A stretch of 64,000 nucleotides of DNA from Saccostrea echinata (lineage: Eukaryota): assembly GCF_033153115.1 (NCBI RefSeq), contig NW_026889783.1, forward strand, positions 434,001-498,000, written 5' to 3'. Below, piece after piece: positions 6,701-18,718 of this stretch. The position numbers and the translations under genes were made by a program. Each line of letters begins with the position of its first letter. Position 1 is the first letter of the stretch. The notes under the pieces were generated by a model, which made no database searches, had not been told where the DNA came from, and was given only the letters and a program-made list of their open reading frames with translations.

Positions 6701-9700
6701 TGTCCCACTGGTGAAAGAAATTCCATATTCATCTACTACACATTGAATATCCTCTATTTATATTTTCTTTGAACCCATAGATTTTATACTGTTTTTACAA
6801 CTATACAGTTTATTGCATTTTGCTTGTACAGTTGCAAAAGAGGCCATTTCTGCTTGTTTGACTATGATTTCTAACTCCCAAGTTTTTTTTTGTTTTTGCT
6901 CAGTATTCACTGTCAAGCGTTAGTTTGTCTATGCTGTCAATCAGTTTTTCTATTTTGTGTATATACATAAGATCTTTCTTTTCTGCTTCTTTCTTGTACT
7001 CTTCTACTATTTCTTTCACAATGCTTTTTATGAGAGATTTAATTTAGGTCATCTGCTTTTATTATTATGTTTTCTTGATGGTCGCTAATTTCTTGTAGAT
7101 CTTTTTTAATTATAGCCCATTTATCACCTTGGGCTTGCTCTGCTCTTTCTAGCACTTTTTTCCATTTTATCAGTTTTATCTTTGTTTTTTACCATTTGCC
7201 TTGTGTTTGCCATTTACACAATATAACAAGAAGCAGTTCACAATGTAGAATACTTATGAGATTTCAATATTTTAATCCACAAAAGCACTGTTTTCTGCCT
7301 TTACAATTTTCACTAATAACATTAAGCAACACTTTTAATTCCTGTCACATAGATTTTTCAAGAACAACTACAACTAATAAGACCTTAAATATGTCAAGTT
7401 CTCTCCTCATTATTACCTTGTGTCAACACAAGTGGAATGACTTCTCCTTTTTCATTAATTTTATTTAATACTTTTCACCTCTTTTTCATTACTCCTTTGA
7501 AAAGGGTATCACTCTTCATTTGAACGATGTGAATCCCCTCCACCCAAGAATACTTTGTGGCAAGTTTGGTTTAAACTGTCCCAGTCGTTATAGAGAAGAA
7601 ATTGAACATGTGAAATATTAACAGACGACATGCCACATGCTACTTATAACTACCTAGGTATTTAAACCTACTCCAGGTAGCTATTTTTACCTACTTTTTG
7701 CTTTATTTGCATTTTGTGGCCAAACCCACGAACAGCGCAATATGGTAACCACCAAATTTCTTAATACAGTCACACTGATGATGAATACGACAAAAAATTT
7801 GGAAAAAATGATTACTTTCTAACTTATCAATTTTGCATAAAAACAACATCCAGTTTCATTTTCTGGTAGCTAAGGATCATAAAGTCTAAAATTACAAACC
7901 TGTATCAATTTTTAAGCTAATCTTCATGCAATCTTAGACAAAAAAATTTTGGGGATGATTTTTCATGCCCTTCCTGTCCAATTTCCGCCCTCAAAAAAGT
8001 TTACAAAATAATAATAATCTTTATTTAGGAATAGGCATTATGCAATGTACATGAACATTGAGGTGTGAGTATTATATACATATAAAACTTAATTAGACAT
8101 GATTTAAGAGATGATTTTAAAACGAATTAACTAATAAATCTTATTTTGCATATAAATCAACTAAATATATTATATTATATATATGCCTAAACCCAAGGAT
8201 AGCCCATGAAAGCCAGTATGGCTTATTTCAAATGGGGTCCTTTTACATGTAACAAAATTACTGGCATATGACATATATAATATACTTAATATAAACAATA
8301 CATAATATACTTACTATAAACAAAATGGCTTAAAATTTCAATCATACTTAATATGCAAAAGCCTCTAAGAACAGTTTGGTTATAAATCTAATACATGTAG
8401 TATAAAAAGTCTTCTTTGGACATTTTCATAAGTTTTTCCATAAAATGCTTTTTGACCTCTTTTTTGAATTTTGATTTATTGGTTATTGTTTTAATCTGAT
8501 CAGGTAGAGAATTCAAATCTTTAATTCTATTGTAAAAAAAGTTTCACTTTCCATTTTTGAACCCTTGGCACAAAAAAATTAAATTTACTTGACCTTGTAC
8601 AATTTGTAGAAACATTTCGCTTAAAATTGCTGTACATATAATTTGGACCTTTATTATGATATATATTGTAGACATGGTTGAGGCTTAATTGACAAACTCT
8701 ATTTCTGATATTCAAAAAACCCAATTTTTCAAATTCATTAACACTGACTCTTGATCTAGGTGAAACATCAAGAATAAATCTAATAATCTTGTTCTGTGAA
8801 ACCTGAAGTCTTTTTTTTTAATTTTACAGATAGTCTTTCATACCAACAAGTGATAGCATAATCGATGTGACATTGAATTAAAGCAGTGCACAAAGATTTT
8901 CTTGATTGCATTGACAAACATGATTTTTGCCAATATAAAAATTTAAGTTGTTGGTTTGTTTTGCTAATAATACTTTCTACAATTTTCTCACCAGATAGTA
9001 TGTTGTCTTAAAAAAACCCTCCTAAATATTTAACACAATTTTTACATTCAATTTTGATTCCATCACATACTACTGAAAAGGTGTTCATATCATATGACTT
9101 AAATTTTCTTGGAGGTCCAAATAAAATACTTTCTGTCTTTCCTAAAAGTAGAGAAAGTTTATTATCAACTAACCAGTGCTTACATTCCTCTAAAATCTCA
9201 GATAGTTTTTTATACTAATGACTTCTGGATTGGTGTGTGAAAAAAGAATAGCTGTATCATCTGCATATATATATAAAAGAACTTTGCATTCAGAATCATT
9301 ACTGACACTGAGGTCATTTACATACAATAAAAATAAAAGAGGCCCAAGTATACTGCCTTGAGGTACCCCACACGAAATATAATTGACATCTGAAAAAGTG
9401 TTGTTAACATTTATCATTTGTTTTCTACTGGATAAGTAAGATTTAAACCATCCAACCGATTTTACACCAATGACTTGGATAATTGACAATGACAAATTAA
9501 CACACTGAATTTTTTCTGTGCAAGTGCACAAGTAGTCCGAAATATCTGACGTTTTCCAGGCTTTTTTCACGATTTTGATATTTTACGTGCCAGGAAAACA
9601 TCAGAACCGGCGCCATTAGGAAAACTGGGAATTCGCCGCCTCCAACCAGAGGCGGCATTCTCGGGTTGATTTTCAATCCTTGCAAAGCGAATGAAATGTC

Positions 9701-10524: not shown

Positions 10525-10928
10525 CTTTCTTGCTGAACTTTCCTGTTTATCATTTAAGACACGTGTACGTTACTGTATGTTGTGAGCATGACTCCAACAA
10601 ACAGAAAGTAGAAAAAGTAAGACGATATTGATCCCGAATTTAAAAATAAATTTTGTTACAACTTTTGTGTTGACGCTAATCTTTGGTAAAGCATTTTACT
10701 GTGAAAAGATCGAAAAGATAGTACATGTATTAGTTTTACAAATGAAATGTTTTATGAACAATTTTCCTTTTTTATTTTTATTATTATTTTTTCCCCAAAG
10801 AAATCGGGTTCGAAATGAGGAACAACAACGGGAATTCCCAACCAAAGCCAAAGCCGAAGGACAAGAACATAAAAAGATGTTAAGTTCACTTGTGGGATTT
10901 TAAAGACAAACCATTGATACGAAACATT
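10525..10928. promoter_or_regulatory. Probable bidirectional promoter / 5' UTRs shared by LRPAP1 and FADD; contains a kB site and an E-box
   Basis: Only 404 bp between the divergent ATGs; GGGAATTCCC at 10830-10839; CACGTG at 10560-10565. Confidence 0.65.
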
Positions 10929-13900
10929 ATGGCTGCTGATTTTGAATATAAACAAATGTTACTGAAGCTTGATAAATCATTGAAAACTGAGGAATTTGAG
11001 TCGCTCATGTTTCTGTGTAAAGATGATGTTAGGAAAAGAGAAAGAGAAAATGTTAAAAGACCTACAGATTTGTGGGAAATTCTGGAGACCCGAGAAAAAC
11101 TAGGTCCAACAAATTTAATGTTTCTTAAGGATCTCATTCGTCATTCCTGTAATGGTCGTGTTGATGTGATGAAGATAATTGAAAACTTTGAGAATGGAAT
11201 TCCAGATGATCAACAGTTTGTGCCACCTCGGCCAGTTTGTCAACCATCGCAACAACCAGTGATGGGGAATCGTACTCCTTATCAAATGAATCATTTAAGT
11301 AAGTTAAAAATGTAACATAAGATTAACCACTTGAACCACCAATGTCCATTTCTAGTATAGATGGTTAGAATAATCTACCTGTGTCTCGGAACAAGCCCTC
11401 ACCACAGTTAGAATATGTCCCATATACTTGCAATGTAGCAAATCAGAGTGGATCCACTCCGAAATGACTGAAGAATACAAAAGGAGTTGCACTGAAAATA
11501 ACTACCAAATTAATCATAACAAACCTTTTTGAGATTATATATGCCTTTTAACCTAAAAAATAATCAATATGAATATGAAAATTCAACTCATTTTCTCAAC
11601 GTTTTTTCCTCGCTTCAAATTTAACGCCATGTTGACATTCGGAACTCTCTGGATTGTTCATAGAAAACGCACAGAGTTCGAGTTATTGCCCGTGTTTATT
11701 TTGCAACATTGCTAATACACAGAACAAATTCTATCGTTAAACCGGGTCTGTAGGACAATATCATTTTAACAATAGAACGTTCTATCTATAGTATAGAATG
11801 AAATACATGCCAATATGTAGGTATTGTATATACCCACTTATAAATGTATAAGTCATATAATTTTTTCAACTACACACATAAGCATGATTAATTAAATCAA
11901 ATCAAGTTTTGATTTTTTTTTAATGACTGTCATTGCCATTGACCTAGACCTCAACTTTTCTCATTGTAATATGATGAGCTAAAAGTTGTTAAAGGTGACC
12001 CATCAAAAGTACAGTGTCGTGCCAAAATGTGCTTAATACGAAAACTTTCAAAATTGTAGAAGTCAGTGCTTTCCTGTATTTGTCATGTTGATTCACAAAA
12101 TTTAATCACATTAAAATTAGCTATATGATCATACAGATTTGAGCTGACTGTCTTGTTGAAATTGGATTCATATAACTTTTTTTTTTTTATTTTCACAGAT
12201 CCAAATACAAGTAATACAGTGAATGTAGACAGTAAGTCAACTACATGTATTTGCACTTATTTATAGCTCTACTGATCAGAGACCAGAAGAGCTTAAGACC
12301 ATAGAAGATTAACTGGCAAGGTTGGAAATATGCAGCTAACGTCATTTAAATCTATTGCAGTCAATTTAAAAAACTTTCATATATGTATTTATTTCCAAGA
12401 TCTGCCAACCCCCTCCCCCACACTGGAATTAAATGGTTGTCCCCTATTTATTTTCTTTAAAAAAAAAACAAACAATTGGACAGGTATAAAACTCTAATTA
12501 TATAAAATTCAAACTACCGGTATTCCAAAATTGCTGAGGTAGATTAAAAATGAATTTTGAACTAGAGTTTCAATCCAATGTTTTCTCATATGCCTGCGCA
12601 GAATTGTATCTGCCTATTTCATTGTCCTTCATCAAATGTTTTGACTGAAACAGAATTGAAATGACGTGAGCTGCATATTTCCAATCTTGCCAGTAAGGTG
12701 TCTGTCATCCGTCTGTCTAGTGTCTCTCTATGATCAATGTTTTCAAATACTCCTCCTCCCACAGATTTGGTCTGATTTCAATAAAACTTGGTACAAAAGA
12801 AGACTATACTAAGATACATAATTCTATTTTCAGTTTTTGGTGTTGCCATGGTTACTAAAAATAGAATTTTCTGTGAAAATCTTTCAAAACGTTACTCCTC
12901 CTATAGTTTTAGTTGATTTCAATAAGACTTGATAAACAAGTAGACTTTACATGTACTAAGATAAATAATTCTATGTATTGTTTTTTTTATTAATTTCAAC
13001 AAATGGTGTTGCCATGGTTACTAATAATAAAACCATCTGGATTGTCCAAATTTTAAAATGAGCAATTTATCTCAGATTTTGCAGTTTCATTTCAATTTCT
13101 TTTTTACATGTGATTGTCTAGTGTATCCTTCACAGCATAGCTGTGACTTATTTTTTGAAAATTACATCCATGGTTAAAGAAATATAACAAAAAATGTGTT
13201 TTATTTTCATAAATTATTTTTTTATTAACATAAAAATGTCCATGTAACTTTTTTTGACATGTTTTGCGAGATATTTTATACATTTATTAACCGAAAATTT
13301 TAAACTCTAAAACATCATATTTGCAAATATTTACATTTGCTATCTTTTTCTTCTTAACCAACTATGAAATTGATTTGAATGCCATTTTCATGTATACTCA
13401 CTCGTAGAAATATACACAGAGAAACACTTAAGTGACGTCACAATGAGGCTACAGAGACTTTAATAAAAGTATAACGATATAGGGCAGCAAGAAATTCAAA
13501 CACTGAGTATATTTTTGCTGCTTTTAAACATGTAAAATGTAAATCTAAGGAATGTTTTTAAGTTTAGTGTGAATTATTGGTATGTAAATCAAACAGATTT
13601 GCAACAAAGGCATATTTTTCATGAAGCACTAGCACACTTCATGAAATATGCCTATGTGACAAGTCTGTGTGATTTGCACATCATCAACTCACACAAAACT
13701 TTTCAAAATTCTGAAAAAATGCAAAAAATTCACAAATATAATTAAGAACCAAGATCAGTCTTTCAATGCTAAAACCTTATTTTAAAAGGGACGTGTTAAA
13801 GATCTATCAAATAAAATTTTGGTGTAGCATTCATCCTTAAAACATTACAGCTCTTATGTTTTTGGTATGAATTTAATAAAAATTGGTACAAAGGTTTAAG

Positions 13901-14382
13901 CAAGGATCATTATTCCTTTTTATTGATGTTGCCATTGCTGTTATAAGTTCAAGTCTACCAGTAGGTGCTGCTGTATAAGAACAAAGCAGTAGAGTTACAG
14001 TCTTGTCAGAGACTTCTGCTTTTTATTGCATTTCATCAATTTCATATAACTTTTGCCTTTGATGTTAACAAAAATTGTCAGATTATTATGCTAAAATAAG
14101 ACTTCTTTTATAGAATATATGAAAGAAATCAATTTCTTAACAAAGAATTTGGGTAAGGAATGGCGATTCTTCATGAGGACGCTGGGTGTTACGGATGGCG
14201 ACATGTTGTCAGTGGAACAGGATTATCCACGTAGTTTACGGGATCAGATATACCAGTGCTTGGTACAGTGGATAAGTGATAATGGTGGACAGTTTGATCG
14301 GGGAAAAGTAATAGGTGCGCTGCGAGACTCTGCCGTTGAAAGATATGACTTAGCTGGACGTATTGAAGATCATGACATTTAA
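10929..14382 (+). CDS. FADD: FAS-associated death domain protein (DED + death domain), ~223 aa; exons 10929-11298, 12199-12231, 14114-14382
   Basis: DED: YKQMLLKLDKSLKTEEFESLMFLCKD...DLWEILETREKLGPTNLMFLKDL...GRVDV. DD: LTKNLGKEWRFFMRTLGVTDGDMLSVEQDYPRSLRDQIYQCLVQW...ERYDLA. Phase-1 junctions, total 672 nt. AATAAA at 14839. Confidence 0.9.
12312..12694. mobile_element. MITE with ~50-bp TIRs in FADD intron 2
   Basis: ACTGGCAAGGTTGGAAATATGCAGCTAACGTCATTT / AAATGACGTGAGCTGCATATTTCCAATCTTGCCAGT. Confidence 0.75.
13561..13700. repeat. Imperfect ~140-bp foldback
   Basis: AGGCATATTTTTCATGAAG-cactagcaca-CTTCATGAAATATGCCT core, with degenerate outward pairing to AGTTTAGTGTGA / TCACACAAAACT. Confidence 0.65.
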
Positions 14383-14967
14383 TCAAAATGCTGAACCTTG
14401 AAAGCAGATGAATATTTATGTGATACATTGTAGTGTGATACTCTGTGCACAGTTATTTGTTTTTGATTATACTGCAAGTGTCACTTGTCTTTTAACATTT
14501 ATGAACCAAGTCTATAAATTTAAAACATTCATACTTCATTATCTTCCATTGAAAAGAGTATGTGGCCCTGAACTTCAGTCCCTTGTGTACAAAGATTTTC
14601 CTTAAAATTGACTTGGTAGTTCTTGAGAAGTAGTCAAAATTGTAAAACATTAAACAGCTGTACAGAATATAAACTTTGATAAGAAAAGCTCACTTGAGCT
14701 TTGAGCTCCATTGAGCTTACTAGAACCTCTATGTGCACATATTTGAGCATATTCAAGAAAAGTACAATATGTCATGTTCTTTTTGGTGGAGTCATAAATG
14801 CTATCCTTTATATGATCAGATGATATGTACATGTATATAATAAATTTAGATCACCTGAGTCAGACAGGTGACATTATTATCTGTTATCTCACTTTCTAAG
14901 AGCTGAACCTATTCCAAACATTTCTAGTTTATAGCATCTGTAGGTAGAGTAAACATTGTAATTGTCA

Positions 14968-15940
14968 CAGTTCCTGTCTGTCTGACTAAAGTCAGCCCTT
15001 TCTATTTCACTTCCTTGTAGTAGGTGTCTTTAGTCTGACTGCAGTTCCTATCTATCTGACTCAAGCCAGCCCTTTCTATTTCACTTCCTTGTAGGGGCTG
15101 GCTTTAGTCAGACTGCAGTTCCTATCTGTCTGACTAAAGTCAGCCCTTTCTATTTCACTTCCTTGTAGGGGCTGGCTTTAGTCTGACTGCAGTGTTTGTC
15201 CGTCTGACTAAAGTCAGCCCCTTCTATTTCACTTCCTTGTAGGGGCTGGCTTTAGTCTGACTGCAGTGTTTGTCTGTCTGACTAAAGTCAGCCCCTTCTA
15301 TTTCACTTCCTTGTAGGGGCTGGCTTTAGTCTGACTGCAGTTCTTGTCTGTCTGACTAAAGTCAGCCCCTTCTATTTCACTTCCTTGTAGGGGCTGGCTT
15401 TAGTCTGACTGCAGTGTTTGTCTGTCTGACTAAAGTCAGCCCCTTCTATTTCACTTCCTTGTAGGGGCTGGCTTTAGTCTGACTTCAGTTCTTGTCTGTC
15501 TGACTAAAAGCAGCCCCTTCTATTTCACTTCCTTGTAGGGGCTGGCTTTAGTCTGACTTCAGTTCTTGTCTGTCTGACTAAAAGCAGCCCTCTTCTATTT
15601 CACTCCCTTGTAGGGGCTGGCTTTAGTCTGACTGCAGTTCTTGTCTGTCTGACTAAAGTCAGCCCCTTCTATTTCACTTCCTTGTAAGGGCTGGCTTTAG
15701 TCTGACTGCAGTGTTTGTCTGACTAAAGTCAGCCCCTTCTATTTCACTTCCTTGTAGGGGCTGGCTTTAGTCTGACTGCAGTTCTTGTCTGTCTGACTAA
15801 AGTCAATCCCTTCTATTTCACTTCCTTGTAAGGACTGACTTTAGTCAAGCTACAGTTCCTATCTGTCTAACTAAAGTCAGCCCCTTCTATTTCACTTCCT
15901 TGTAAGGACTGGCTTTAGTCTGACTGCAGTTCCTGTCTGT
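14968..15940. repeat. Tandem array of 13 x 74-bp palindromic units
   Basis: Consensus CAGTTCTTGTCTGTCTGACTAAAGTCAGCCCCTTCTATTTCACTTCCTTGTAGGGGCTGGCTTTAGTCTGACTG; equivalent positions at 15271, 15345, 15419. Confidence 0.97.
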
Positions 15941-16730
15941 TTCTTTGGTGGTGGGAGCAAAACCATCACTTCCAAAATCCTCTACTACTGAACATATCGC
16001 ATTAGATTATATTCTCTGGATCATCAGATTGGCCCATAGGATGGGGGCTTTTTTTTTCTCTGGGACATTTGGCAAACAAGATCGAGTTTATGCTTGGGAT
16101 GTTTTTTTTTTTTAAATGACTAGTTCACGGCCAGGAACACGTTAAGTTCCTAGACAGTACCGTTGTCAGAAACCTTTAAAGTTAAGCACTGAAACTGGTT
16201 CGTTGTCATGAACGTACAGGTGAGGTTATGATAAAATCCGTCCGGTGTCATGACTTCAGAAGACAGGCTGTGAGAAGTTTTTCATTTTTCAAGTTAAATT
16301 ATCTATAACAATGTCTGAAATTGCAATGGGAAACAGGGCTGACACCCTATTTGGTGCTGTATGAATTTCAGCCGTTAAAAACAAGTAATAAAACTTAAAG
16401 AAGAGTTTGCGTTGGCGACATTATATAACTCTGTTGAAATCACTTGTGGATTTGATTCGTTTTCCTACTGAGATGTTATATTTTTCGTAAATAGAATATA
16501 ATATACACACCAATTGGTGCAGACAGTGTCAAGACATGTTGAAAGCCTTTACTGAAAAATTGAGAACAAATCAAAACTGAAAATTTTGATTTATTTCAAT
16601 TTTTGTCCGTTGTCATGACAAGATACGAAAATTCAGTCCTTTGTCATCGGTCCGTTGTTGCTACTGGTTTGTATACACTACGATCTCATGTTGGTTTAGG
16701 TATCGTTAATCATGCCATCAAAAAGAGGGT

Positions 16731-18718
16731 TGTGACGGTACATCTTGTCGTTTTGTACATATTGTCGTCGGCGAAAAAATGTACCTACCCTTACTGCACA
16801 TATCGTCGTCCATCGATACATATTGTCGCCGGCGACAATTTGTACCGAGACGAGCCTTTTTTTCCTCCTGCGTAATGGAAGACAAAATGTACAGTCAAGA
16901 ATCGGCACGTTTTGTCGTCGGCGACAATATGTACTGACCATTGGCACATTTTGTCGCCGATATATTGTGTTGAATATTTACTAAGGTCGTGGAGAGAGAG
17001 AGGGGGAGAGAGAGATTGACACACATACACAGAGAAAGAGAGAGATCTAGACAGACAGAAGGATAGACAAAGTGTTTGGAGGATAAATAAACAAACAAGT
17101 TGTATGTATGCATTACTCGCAATTTTGTAGGGAGAAATGGTGTTGCTCAGAAAATTGTGTCCAGCATTGGTTTACATGACTATGATATGTCAAAAATACC
17201 GTAATTCTTGAGATATCTGAAAAATCAGTCTATTCTTTTTTTCTCATTATATATACATGGATATGAGATTGAAAGTTATTTGTTCAGTAGAAATGTTATC
17301 TGGAATTCATTTTTTTCTTTGCTTAATTCTCATAAGAGTGCCGATATAATTGGTGTAGGGATTGACATATTTTAGCTCACCTGAACTGATAGCTCTAGTG
17401 TGCTTTTCTGATCATATTTCTTGTGTCGTCCGTCTGCCTGTCGGTAAACTTTTCACATTTTCAGCTTCTTTTCATGAACTACTGGCCAATTTCAATTTCA
17501 ACCAAACTTACCAGAAAGCAAACGTGGATAAAGGGAGTCAAGTCTGTTCAAATTAATGGCCATGCCCTCTTTCAAGAAAGTACATGTATAGTTAAGAATT
17601 AGTGAAAATTTAGTGACATCTTTAAATAATTTCTCAAGAACAATTGTGTGAGAAAAGTTGAAACTTATGTGAAAGCTTTATTATAATTAAAGTGTAGATT
17701 CATTTTTATTCAGATCATGTCTGGGAAAGGGTGGGGCTACAATGGGTGATCAAAGTTTTAAGAATAATTCATTCAAAATTTTCTTCTCAGGAACTTCTGG
17801 ATCAGAAGAGATTATACTTATGTGAAAGTACATATATGAAGTGTACTTTTCATTTTTTAGATTTTGGCACGAATTTTCAATGGCCCTGAGTTCCAAGAAT
17901 AGGTCTAAATTTTTGGCCCTTCTCCGGCAAGTGATGATGTTAAATTTCCTTATGAGTGAAAAATTCTCTAGAGGGATATTAAAACAACAAACAAACAAAC
18001 AAAAACAAAATCAATTTTGTTCAAATCATGACCTCCATAGGTAGGGTGGGTCCTTAATTGGTGATAAAAGTTTTCAGTTGGAATATACGGTATACAAAAA
18101 CTCTTTTAAAAACTTCTCAAGAACCAAAGGCGGATCTAGCACCGGTGCACCCCCCCCCCATCCCTATCTCCCACCCTGCCCCCTCCGTTTGATTTTTTTC
18201 ATTTTTCTTTGCTTTTGTAAATTCTGTTTTTTTAACCTGTATATACTCTCAATTTTGTCCACAGGTAAAATTTCATGACTAAATAATATACTTAACTTAT
18301 ACAGTAACATGCACTCAAACGATTTTTTTTGTCTTGTCAAAAAAAATCTGAACCCCCCCCCCTTTCCCCGTTCTGAAATTTTTAGATCAAATATTGAGAA
18401 CAGCAGTAGGCCCGTGATTAGCAATGTTTATATGGAAGCATCCTCAGGTAGTGTAGATTCAAGTTTCTTTTAATCATGACCCCCGGGCCTAGGTTGGGGC
18501 CACAAAGGGCGATCAAAGTTTTACACAGGAATATATAGGAAAATTCTTTAAACTTTCTCTTCTCAGCAACAGCAAAGCAATGATTAGCCATATCTGTATG
18601 GAAACATTGCCATGCATTGTCATGCGAGATATACTGATGGACGACAATATGTTCAGTGAGTGTATGTACACATTGTCGAAGGCGACATATGAACATGACG
18701 ACAAAATGTACCGCCACA
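16731..18718. mobile_element. Non-autonomous TIR element with TGT...ACA ends and subterminal TGTCGCCGGCGACA motifs
   Basis: TGTGACGGTACATCTTGTCGTTTTGTACATAT matches the reverse complement of ATATGAACATGACGACAAAATGTACCGCCACA; no TSD seen. Confidence 0.55.
17368..18590 (+). mobile_element. Helentron-like element with degenerate Cg170-like monomers, nested in the preceding element
   Basis: TTTTAGCTCACCTGAAC head, GTCCGTCTG microsatellite, repeated TCAAATCATGACCCC...GGGTGGGGCCACAA...AAAGTTTT monomers. Confidence 0.65.

What the first reader, a model, noticed from the sequence alone, without database searches (positions are those of the whole stretch)
14968..15940. Array of 13 pre-miRNA-sized hairpins just past the FADD poly(A) signal (best candidate for a novel system)
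Seen: every 74-bp unit holds GTCTGACTAAAGTCAGCCCCT, an almost invariant 18-nt loop TCTATTTCACTTCCTTGT, then AGGGGCTGGCTTTAGTCTGAC. This is a ~21-bp stem with one U-U mismatch and one U-G wobble, and the wobble works only in the + (FADD-sense) RNA. A ~14-nt linker follows and is the most variable part. Some variants improve pairing: the copy near 15042 has GCCAGCCC/GGGCTGGC and TTAGTCAGAC, and the copy near 15779 has CTGACTTTAGTC. Others weaken it. The array starts ~125 bp after the FADD AATAAA (14839) and sits inside a decayed Helentron-like shell (head TTTAGATCACCTGAGTCAGACAGGTGAC at ~14844). Known: oyster Helentrons carry central tandem repeats, and hairpin arrays can give rise to miRNA/endo-siRNA clusters. 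Inference: read-through from an immune/apoptosis gene would make a poly-hairpin RNA that could yield small RNAs, engage dsRNA sensors or aid termination. It may equally be a neutral young VNTR driven by hairpin slippage.
Basis: partly seen in the sequence, partly recalled or inferred. Interest (0 to 1): 0.75.

Follow-up and report, generated by a model that had tools for sequence, protein, structure and literature searches.

The report
Tandemly amplified mini-transposon beside FADD
The hairpin array is a small palindromic transposon (MITE), copied head to tail 13-15 times with its 10-bp insertion footprint between copies; it lies just past the end of the FADD messenger RNA and looks like an ordinary variable repeat.

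Summary
TRF finds a 74-bp repeat at 14968-15940, 13.2 copies, and each unit folds as a ~21-bp hairpin.

The hairpin is the terminal inverted repeat pair of a low-copy MITE family. Dispersed single copies of 72-104 bp are near-perfect palindromes. They carry 9-10-bp target-site duplications (TSDs) at 23 of 24 distinct sites.

The array unit is a 64-bp internally deleted MITE plus exactly 10 bp, and the same 10-mer brackets the array. The "loop" is inner left-TIR sequence whose right-hand partner was deleted. The "linker" is the TSD.

- **Flanks:** both are single-copy, so there is no Helentron shell.
- **Copy number:** a 99%-identical second copy of the locus has 15.2 units, so this is a VNTR.
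- **Transcription:** spliced FADD contigs in 4 of 4 runs end at 14876/14884, 84-92 bp before the array. No depth lies on the array (contigs only).
- **Stem selection:** none detected. 84.4% of cells pair against 84.7% in shuffles.

Verdict: a whole-element-plus-TSD tandem array, a known kind (PMC5932611), probably neutral. A small-RNA role is untested and unlikely.

The parts
14968..15940 (.). Tandem array: 13 units of [10-bp spacer + 64-bp deleted MITE], then a closing 10-bp spacer and 4 ambiguous bases
   Evidence: TRF; unit table; alignment A1
14968..14977 (.). Left copy of the 10-bp target-site duplication (CAGTTCCTGT)
   Evidence: Sequence. It has the same length as the family's TSD.
15927..15936 (.). 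Right copy of the same 10-mer, closing the array
   Evidence: Sequence
15264..15337 (+). Typical unit. Spacer 15264-15273; left TIR arm 15274-15296; 18-nt 'loop' (inner left TIR without a partner) 15297-15314; right TIR arm 15315-15337
   Evidence: comparison with dispersed copies
15042..15115 (+). Edge unit 2. It keeps the family-consensus bases at two stem positions (C at unit position 25, A at 69).
10884..11298 (+). FADD exon with the death effector domain. The 5' limit is where contig X1 starts; the X2 contig starts at 10843.
   Evidence: Pfam DED 9.2e-19; spliced contigs
12199..12231 (+). 33-nt FADD micro-exon
   Evidence: GT..AG joints 11298>12199 and 12231>14114
14114..14876 (+). Last FADD exon. 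Death domain, stop codon at 14380-14382, 3' UTR, AATAAA at 14839-14844. The contig end at 14876 is the likely poly(A) site.
   Evidence: Pfam Death 3.6e-11; contigs of X1, X2 and X3 end at 14876 and X4 at 14884
14877..14967 (.). Single-copy DNA between the mRNA end and the array
   Evidence: only this locus, its C53 counterpart and one weak 58-nt match; table 8 lists no contig piece past 14884 in this stretch.
15941..16125 (.). Single-copy DNA to the right of the array
   Evidence: only C34 and C53 match this part of the query.
16126..16500 (.). Start of an unrelated high-copy repeat. It is not part of the array.
   Evidence: 332 candidates, 40 scored. 38 of those are other loci at 93-96% identity starting at query 171-207.

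Best explanation
A short, internally deleted copy of a palindromic MITE inserted about 90 bp downstream of the FADD poly(A) site and made a 10-bp target-site duplication. The element plus one TSD copy was then duplicated. This happened either by unequal exchange or slippage between the two TSD copies, or by a second insertion at the same site. The dimer grew by unequal exchange to 13-15 units.

Each part of the unit then has a plain origin. The stem is the MITE's terminal inverted repeats. The loop is inner left-TIR sequence that lost its partner in a deletion between two GTAGGG microhomologies. The linker is the TSD.

The array is a copy-number-variable minisatellite lying outside the mature FADD mRNA. 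It most likely has no function.

Shown: the MITE family and its TSDs; unit = element + 10 bp; the bracketing 10-mer; the copy-number difference between two copies of the locus; the mRNA end. Inferred: how the first duplication arose, and neutrality.
For: **A MITE family exists.** A 33-nt TIR pattern with up to 3 mismatches matches 54 times forward and 47 times reverse in the genome. The reversed control matches 0 and 0 times.

**It makes TSDs.** In 34 paired loci, which represent 24 distinct sites, elements are 72-104 bp near-perfect palindromes, with one of 228 bp. 18 sites have a 10-bp TSD (at least 8 of 10 bases match), 5 have a perfect 9-bp TSD, and 1 has none.

**The unit matches the family.** The array unit is a 64-bp element plus exactly 10 bp. 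CAGTTCCTGT stands at both ends of the array, and the inner spacers differ from it by 1-3 bases.

**The deleted form is a mobile variant.** The same asymmetric deleted form, 64-70 bp, occurs at two other loci with their own TSDs: L018 (9 of 10) and L057 (10 of 10).

**The tandem arrangement is local.** Head-to-tail junctions of the family occur only at this locus and its counterpart on C53: 14 of 14 pattern matches. Only these two places match the whole dimer query.

**Flanks are single-copy**.

**Copy number varies.** The C53 copy of the locus is 99.5% and 98.6% identical in its flanks and has 15.2 units. The difference includes a 3-unit block that is repeated in C53 (units 8-10 resemble 11-13).

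**The stem is decaying, not maintained.** The array stem carries 3 mismatch or wobble positions. A canonical copy forms a perfect 34-bp stem (DNA -40.6 kcal/mol, against -18.6 for an array unit).

**No covariation**.

**The mRNA ends before the array.** Contigs end at 14876 (3 runs) or 14884 (1 run). Depth is 0 in all 5 array bins of all 4 runs.

**The kind is known.** Arrays of whole elements with TSD-length junctions are described in PMC5932611 (passages).
Against: - No empty site was found, so the insertion is inferred from structure alone.
- The 10-mer begins with CAGT, which is also how the canonical TIR begins. A second parse is therefore possible: a 74-bp element with no spacer.
- The loop is less variable than the arms (p = 0.0027), which simple neutral decay does not predict. 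A G>A-rich spectrum (11 of 30 changes) and a loop with only one G explain part of it.
- The RNA evidence comes from assembled contigs in runs whose RNA label is a guess. It cannot exclude rare read-through or small RNAs.
- No autonomous partner was identified.
Confidence: 0.85

Rival explanations
1. The array is a small-RNA source. Read-through from FADD, or an own promoter, makes a poly-hairpin RNA that is diced into miRNA- or siRNA-like RNAs, or is sensed as dsRNA.
For: Units fold into ~21-bp stems of pre-miRNA size. Palindromic MITEs are a documented source of miRNA genes (PMC1784062; search listing and start of abstract only). The wobble favours the FADD-sense strand in typical units.
Against: In 4 of 4 runs the spliced FADD contigs end at 14876 or 14884. 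No depth is seen on the array bins, and table 8 lists no contig piece between 14885 and 16125. Stem-preserving change shows no excess: 458 of 500 shuffles pair at least as well. Compared with the MITE consensus the stem has lost pairs. The folding register is degenerate. The best Rfam match in the array scores 26.5 bits against a gathering score of 55.
Confidence: 0.05
2. The array is the central tandem repeat of a decayed Helentron/HINE.
For: HINEs carry short central tandem repeats and GTCY-type microsatellites (PMC7492417, passages). Each unit holds GTCTGTCTGAC.
Against: The 168 bp to the left and about 190 bp to the right are single-copy, so there are no conserved left or right modules. 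The array occurs at one locus only. Single copies of the unit have 9-10-bp TSDs and terminal inverted repeats, whereas HINEs have no TSD. The proposed 'head' lies inside the FADD mRNA contigs.
Confidence: 0.02
3. The unit is a 74-bp element with no spacer, concatenated by rolling-circle replication of an excised circle or by another TSD-independent route.
For: The spacer begins with CAGT, like the canonical TIR. The unit could therefore be read as a TIR with a 10-nt insert.
Against: No dispersed copy carries the 10-nt insert. All 34 paired loci start with the plain terminus, within the 3 mismatches allowed in 18 nt. Under this parse the array has no TSD, and it ends with a partial unit that happens to be exactly the 'insert'. 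The spacer length equals the family's modal TSD length. The first and last spacers are identical to each other, while the inner ones have drifted.
Confidence: 0.05
4. The array acts at the DNA level on FADD, for example as a termination or pause element, an insulator or a protein-binding array. Selection would then act on the conserved 'loop'.
For: It sits 84-92 bp past the mRNA end. The loop is significantly less variable than the arms.
Against: Nothing tested here shows an effect. Two copies of the locus differ by two units and by rearranged blocks. The loop sequence is simply inner TIR sequence, also conserved among dispersed copies. Base composition explains part of the asymmetry.
Confidence: 0.03

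Closest known systems
Tandem arrays of whole transposons with a TSD at each junction (P-element, hobo and R1 in Drosophila; McGurk & Barbash 2018, PMC5932611; passages read)
   Same: The monomer is a complete element plus a junction of exactly the family's TSD length. The junction sequence matches the flanking target. Growth and copy-number variation fit unequal exchange.
   Different: Here the element is a 64-bp deleted MITE rather than a kilobase transposon. The array has 13-15 units in single-copy DNA next to a gene. All units share private changes, so a single founder was amplified in place. Double insertion and TSD-mediated exchange cannot be told apart.
Tandem-repeat-carrying MITEs and HINEs of bivalves (Cg_HINE, PMC7492417, passages; DTC84 of Donax, PMC3879986, search listing and start of abstract only)
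   Same: A short satellite-like array tied to a non-autonomous DNA transposon.
   Different: In those elements the repeats lie inside the element, between conserved flanking modules, and travel with it to many loci. HINEs have no TSD. Here the whole element is the repeat unit, the flanks are unique and the array is at one locus. I did not test whether this genome is a bivalve.
MITE-derived miRNA genes (hsa-mir-548 from Made1; PMC1784062; search listing and start of abstract only)
   Same: A palindromic MITE about 80 bp long whose transcript would be a hairpin of pre-miRNA size.
   Different: No transcription or small RNA was seen here. No Rfam family matches. The stem is decaying rather than maintained.

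Membership tests
MITE (non-autonomous TIR DNA transposon) | Terminal inverted repeats | tested here: met
   Dispersed copies are near-perfect palindromes. L023 forms a 34-bp perfect stem.
MITE (non-autonomous TIR DNA transposon) | Target-site duplications of constant length at independent sites | tested here: met
   Of 24 distinct sites, 18 have a 10-bp TSD, 5 a 9-bp TSD and 1 none. L018 and L057 also have TSDs.
MITE (non-autonomous TIR DNA transposon) | Small, non-coding, in multiple dispersed copies | tested here: met
   Elements are 72-104 bp. There are 101 TIR matches against 0 control matches.
MITE (non-autonomous TIR DNA transposon) | Autonomous partner with the same TIRs and a transposase | tested here: inconclusive
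   A 228-bp form has TIRs of roughly 90 nt. One candidate stretch of about 11.6 kb on C30 has a left end that lacks the terminal 19 nt. Its ORFs match DUF6589 (1.7e-11) and Helicase_C (5e-14), and no named transposase domain was found.
Whole-element tandem array with TSD junctions | Junction length equals the family's TSD length | tested here: met
   A 10-nt spacer lies between the right and left termini in the units. The modal TSD is 10 bp.
Whole-element tandem array with TSD junctions | Junction sequence equals the TSD that flanks the array | tested here: met
   The 10-mers at 14968-14977 and 15927-15936 are identical. Inner spacers differ from them by 1-3 bases.
Whole-element tandem array with TSD junctions | Copy-number variation by unequal exchange | tested here: met
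   13.2 against 15.2 units in two 99%-identical copies of the locus, with a repeated 3-unit block in C53. Whether the two are alleles or a recent duplication is not settled.
Helentron / HINE | Conserved left and right modules (subTIRs, 3' palindrome) flanking the repeats at many loci | tested here: not met
   Both flanks are single-copy. The array is at one locus. Features are taken from PMC7492417 passages. Its Supplementary Table S2 could not be seen.
Helentron / HINE | No TSD; insertion at TT | tested here: not met
   Copies of the unit have 9-10-bp TSDs.
miRNA cluster | Transcribed hairpin precursor | tested here: inconclusive
   Depth is 0 on the array in 4 of 4 runs, and FADD contigs end before it. 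These are contigs of runs whose RNA label is a guess, so absence is not proven.
miRNA cluster | Discrete ~22-nt products with 2-nt 3' overhangs | not testable with these tools
   No small-RNA run was offered.
miRNA cluster | Stem maintained by selection, or a match to a known family | tested here: not met
   Covariation score 0.046 against 0.048 in shuffles; 1 double-sided change against a mean of 1.5. No Rfam match reaches its gathering score.

The most novel reading that the evidence does not exclude
The amplified MITE array, set 84-92 bp past the FADD cleavage site, is transcribed only when termination fails, for example under stress or infection. It then yields a burst of hairpin-derived small RNAs or dsRNA. 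These could act on the ~50 dispersed family copies, or feed back on an apoptosis and immune adaptor gene. The unusually conserved 'loop' would be the selected part.
Probability: 0.05. Interest if true: 0.55.

Novelty: new member of a known kind. Interest (0 to 1): 0.2.

Why it matters
This is a clean small example of how a minisatellite is born from a transposon. The monomer boundaries, the insertion footprint, the founder's private mutations and a two-unit copy-number difference between two copies of the locus can all still be read.

It also serves as a caution. MITE arrays imitate clusters of pre-miRNA hairpins. Variants that seem to 'improve the stem' can simply be ancestral transposon bases kept in the edge units.

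For FADD itself nothing suggests an effect. The array lies outside the mature mRNA.

Tried and rejected
**Rfam.** I scanned 13500-17500 at E up to 1. It gave 15 weak matches, none at gathering score. The best in the array was mir-282 at 26.5 bits against 55.

**Helentron shell.** Rejected on single-copy flanks and on the TSDs of dispersed copies.

**Covariation.** No signal. Power is low, because the units are young and homogenised.

**Autonomous partner.**
- I examined 16 lone-TIR loci of 10 kb; five further lone-TIR hits were not fetched. Four had a recognisable partner TIR within 100 bp. Of the other 12, seven were small copies with damaged ends, four were truncated, and one (L071) led to a long stretch on C30.
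- The left end of the C30 stretch is truncated. Its five ORFs of at least 110 aa gave only DUF6589 and Helicase_C.
- The DUF6589 ORF has 82 matches in the genome, the nearest at 54% identity.
- One paper search for DUF6589 gave one unrelated paper.
- The superfamily therefore stays open. My impression that a 9-10-bp TSD with long TIRs looks Mutator-like is recalled, not tested.

**Earlier notes of this scan.** Three look-ups gave nothing that bears on this array.

**Empty site.** None is present in this assembly.

**Not done.** I did not identify the organism, search the FADD protein for homologues, obtain small-RNA data or compare across species. Supplements of the papers were not seen; HINE Table S2 might refine the HINE feature list.

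Full report
**1. The observation.**
The window holds one tandem array at 14968-15940: period 74, 13.2 copies, 92% matches. I cut it into 13 units. Eleven are 74 nt, one is 75 and one is 70.

Each unit has two complementary arms of about 21-23 nt around an 18-nt segment, followed by a short spacer. Single units fold strongly on both strands:

| Unit | + strand (kcal/mol) | - strand (kcal/mol) |
|---|---|---|
| Typical | -35.1 | -29.6 |
| Unit 2 | -32.1 | -30.9 |
| Unit 12 | -20.1 | -25.9 |

In all six folds, 0 of 200 shuffles did as well.

**2. The hairpin is a transposon's inverted repeat.**
A dimer of the unit, searched against the window's own genome (923 Mb), matches in full only at this locus (C34) and at one place on contig C53. 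All other matches are single stretches of about 33-88 nt on many contigs, and many match in both orientations.

Read out, these are near-perfect palindromes of 72-104 bp that start CAGTCTGACTAAAG and end with its reverse complement. A 33-nt terminal pattern with up to 3 mismatches occurs 54 times forward and 47 times reverse. The reversed control occurs 0 and 0 times. Eleven of the 100 listed rows are array units.

I examined 34 paired loci. They reduce to 24 distinct insertion sites, because some are the same site seen twice or copies inside larger duplications. The flanks directly abutting the termini repeat as follows:
- 18 sites: 10 bp. By row, this is 20 rows at 10/10, 6 at 9/10 and 2 at 8/10.
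- 5 sites: 9 bp, perfect.
- 1 site (L029): none.

Comparisons one base out of register gave 0-5 matches in the same table. This is a low-copy MITE family with a 9-10-bp target-site duplication. One 228-bp copy (L046) shows that the inverted repeats of the parent reach roughly 90 nt.

**3. Anatomy of the array unit.**
Set against the family, the unit is a 64-bp element (CTGTCTGACT...AGTCTGACTG) plus exactly 10 nt.
- The left arm and the 'loop' together are the left inverted repeat.
- The right arm is only the outer 23 nt of the right repeat.
- The inner part of the right repeat is missing. The break lies between two GTAGGG motifs, which points to a microhomology deletion.

So the 18-nt 'loop' is inner TIR sequence that lost its partner.

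The same asymmetric form occurs at two other loci with their own duplications: L018 (64 bp, 9 of 10) and L057 (70 bp, 10 of 10). It is thus a variant that moved, or a deletion that recurs.

The 10-nt 'linker' has the modal TSD length. The array begins with CAGTTCCTGT (14968-14977) and ends with the same 10-mer (15927-15936). The inner spacers are 1-3 changes away from it. The layout is TSD-(MITE-TSD)x13.

Head-to-tail junctions of this family, with 0-30 nt between the termini, occur 14 times in the genome. All 14 lie in the C34 and C53 arrays.

**4. Surroundings.**
The 168 bp to the left of the array match only this locus, the C53 locus and one weak 58-nt stretch. To the right, about 190 bp are equally unique. 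An unrelated high-copy repeat starts near 16126: 332 candidates, 40 scored, of which 38 are other loci at 93-96% identity.

So there is no repeated shell around the array. It contains a small 7-bp stem-loop and lies inside the FADD mRNA contigs.

HINEs, as described for the Pacific oyster, have conserved left and right modules, no TSD, and arrays carried to many loci (PMC7492417, passages). None of these holds here.

**5. The gene.**
The ORF at 10890-11315 carries a death effector domain (9.2e-19). The ORF at 14119-14382 carries a death domain (3.6e-11). The exons were searched separately, and I built no joined model.

Contigs from four public runs (three samples, two studies) were laid on 10800-16799. 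The runs' RNA label is a guess. The contigs are spliced with GT..AG joints at 11298>12199 and 12231>14114. That shows they hold cDNA, and it reveals a 33-nt micro-exon.

In X1, X2 and X3 the last-exon contig ends at 14876. In X4 it ends at 14884. That is 32-40 nt past the AATAAA and 84-92 bp before the array. All five depth bins from 15000 to 15999 are 0 in all four runs. Table 8 lists no piece between 14885 and 16125, although 886 pieces are not shown.

The tool warns that contigs drop rare variants and that a hole proves nothing. The fair statement is this: the mature mRNA does not include the array, and read-through was not seen but is not excluded.

**6. A second copy of the locus.**
C53:2652000-2671999 matches the window at 99.5% over 9,260 bp and at 98.6% over 9,690 bp. 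A 319-bp stretch (13725-14043) is present only in the window.

The C53 array has 15.2 units. The unit order is the same at both edges. In the middle, C53 has a three-unit block twice (units 8-10 resemble 11-13), and other units are gained or lost. This is the pattern of unequal exchange. Whether C53 is the other haplotype or a very recent duplication was not settled.

**7. Is the stem under selection?**
On the 28 aligned units (19 distinct rows), using the 23-pair stem:

| Measure | Observed | Shuffled 3' partners |
|---|---|---|
| Cells forming standard pairs | 84.4% | 84.7% (458 of 500 shuffles at least as high) |
| Pairs changed on both sides | 1 | mean 1.5 |
| Covariation score | 0.046 | 0.048 (323 of 500 at least as high) |

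Compared with the family consensus, the array stem has lost pairs at three positions: unit positions 12, 25 and 69. A canonical copy folds at -40.6 kcal/mol as DNA, and an array unit at -18.6.

The register is also degenerate. Right arm, spacer and next left arm fold at -21.0. Three units together fold into a nested structure in which unit 1 pairs with unit 3.

**8. What stays unexplained.**
The loop is variable in 1 of 18 columns and the arms in 21 of 46 (Fisher p = 0.0027). Of 30 distinct changes, 11 are G>A. The loop has a single G, and 15 of 25 G/C arm columns vary against 6 of 21 A/T columns. Composition therefore explains part of the difference, but not all of it. Error-prone processing of the arms, or complex single events in the edge units, are possible. 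Neither was tested.

**9. Mechanism and place among known things.**
Arrays whose monomer is a whole element with a TSD-length junction are described for P-element, hobo and R1. There they are read as a dimer made by double insertion and then expanded by unequal exchange (PMC5932611, passages). Reviews list TSD-mediated exchange and repair as further routes (PMC9659126 and PMC12628747, passages).

Here all units share private changes: CTG instead of CAG at the terminus, and the same deletion. One founder was therefore amplified in place. I cannot tell double insertion from exchange between the two TSD copies. Rolling-circle copying of an excised element is unlikely, because the spacer is target DNA.

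**10. Verdict.**
The sequence features are real. The thing is a MITE-plus-TSD minisatellite, variable in copy number, lying just outside the FADD transcript. I rate it a new member of a known kind and of low interest. The small-RNA reading keeps about a 5% chance, and direct data would be needed to test it.

Noticed in passing
window 13725-14043: A 319-bp stretch in FADD intron 2 is present in the window but absent from the otherwise 99%-identical C53 copy. It is probably a polymorphic insertion.
   Followed up: no
window 13543-13694: A palindromic element lies in the intron. Weak miRNA-like Rfam matches fall well below gathering score (MIR6135 at 38.4 bits against 99). RNA contigs show an 'opposite strands' joint at 13543/13694. 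It is probably another MITE.
   Followed up: no
window 16126-16500 and beyond: A high-copy repeat begins here. The genome holds 332 candidate copies; 40 were scored, and 38 of those are other loci at 93-96% identity. Low-depth contigs with many differences lie on it.
   Followed up: partly
window 16749-16959: Three to four copies of a ~37-nt motif with an internal palindrome (TGTCGCCGGCGACA-like), in both direct and inverted arrangement (families D3/D4, pairs I1/I2).
   Followed up: no
window 9190-9570 (-): A reverse-transcriptase fragment (Pfam RVT_1, 4.9e-12) lies upstream of FADD.
   Followed up: no
window 12199-12231 and 14114/14117: FADD has a 33-nt micro-exon. Run X3 places the last acceptor at 14117 with three other letters in between, where the other three runs use 14114.
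   Followed up: no
window 14600-14799: This 3'-UTR bin has far higher summed contig depth than its neighbours, up to 4022 in X2. Loose ends sit at 14671 and 14708. This suggests a repeat-derived segment inside the FADD 3' UTR.
   Followed up: no
G000:C30, about 12767040-12778686 (L073+L074): A stretch of about 11.6 kb is bounded by the extended TIRs of the same MITE family, but its left end lacks the terminal 19 nt. Its ORFs match DUF6589 and Helicase_C. The DUF6589 ORF belongs to a family with 82 matches in the genome, the nearest at 54% identity. It may be the decayed parent element.
   Followed up: partly
L043, L045, L047, L051, L052 (five loci on C54, C2, C9, C25, C29): Five MITE copies share the same 10-bp TSD (ACTGTGGTGT or its complement). 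The MITE was therefore copied as a passenger inside a larger repeat.
   Followed up: no
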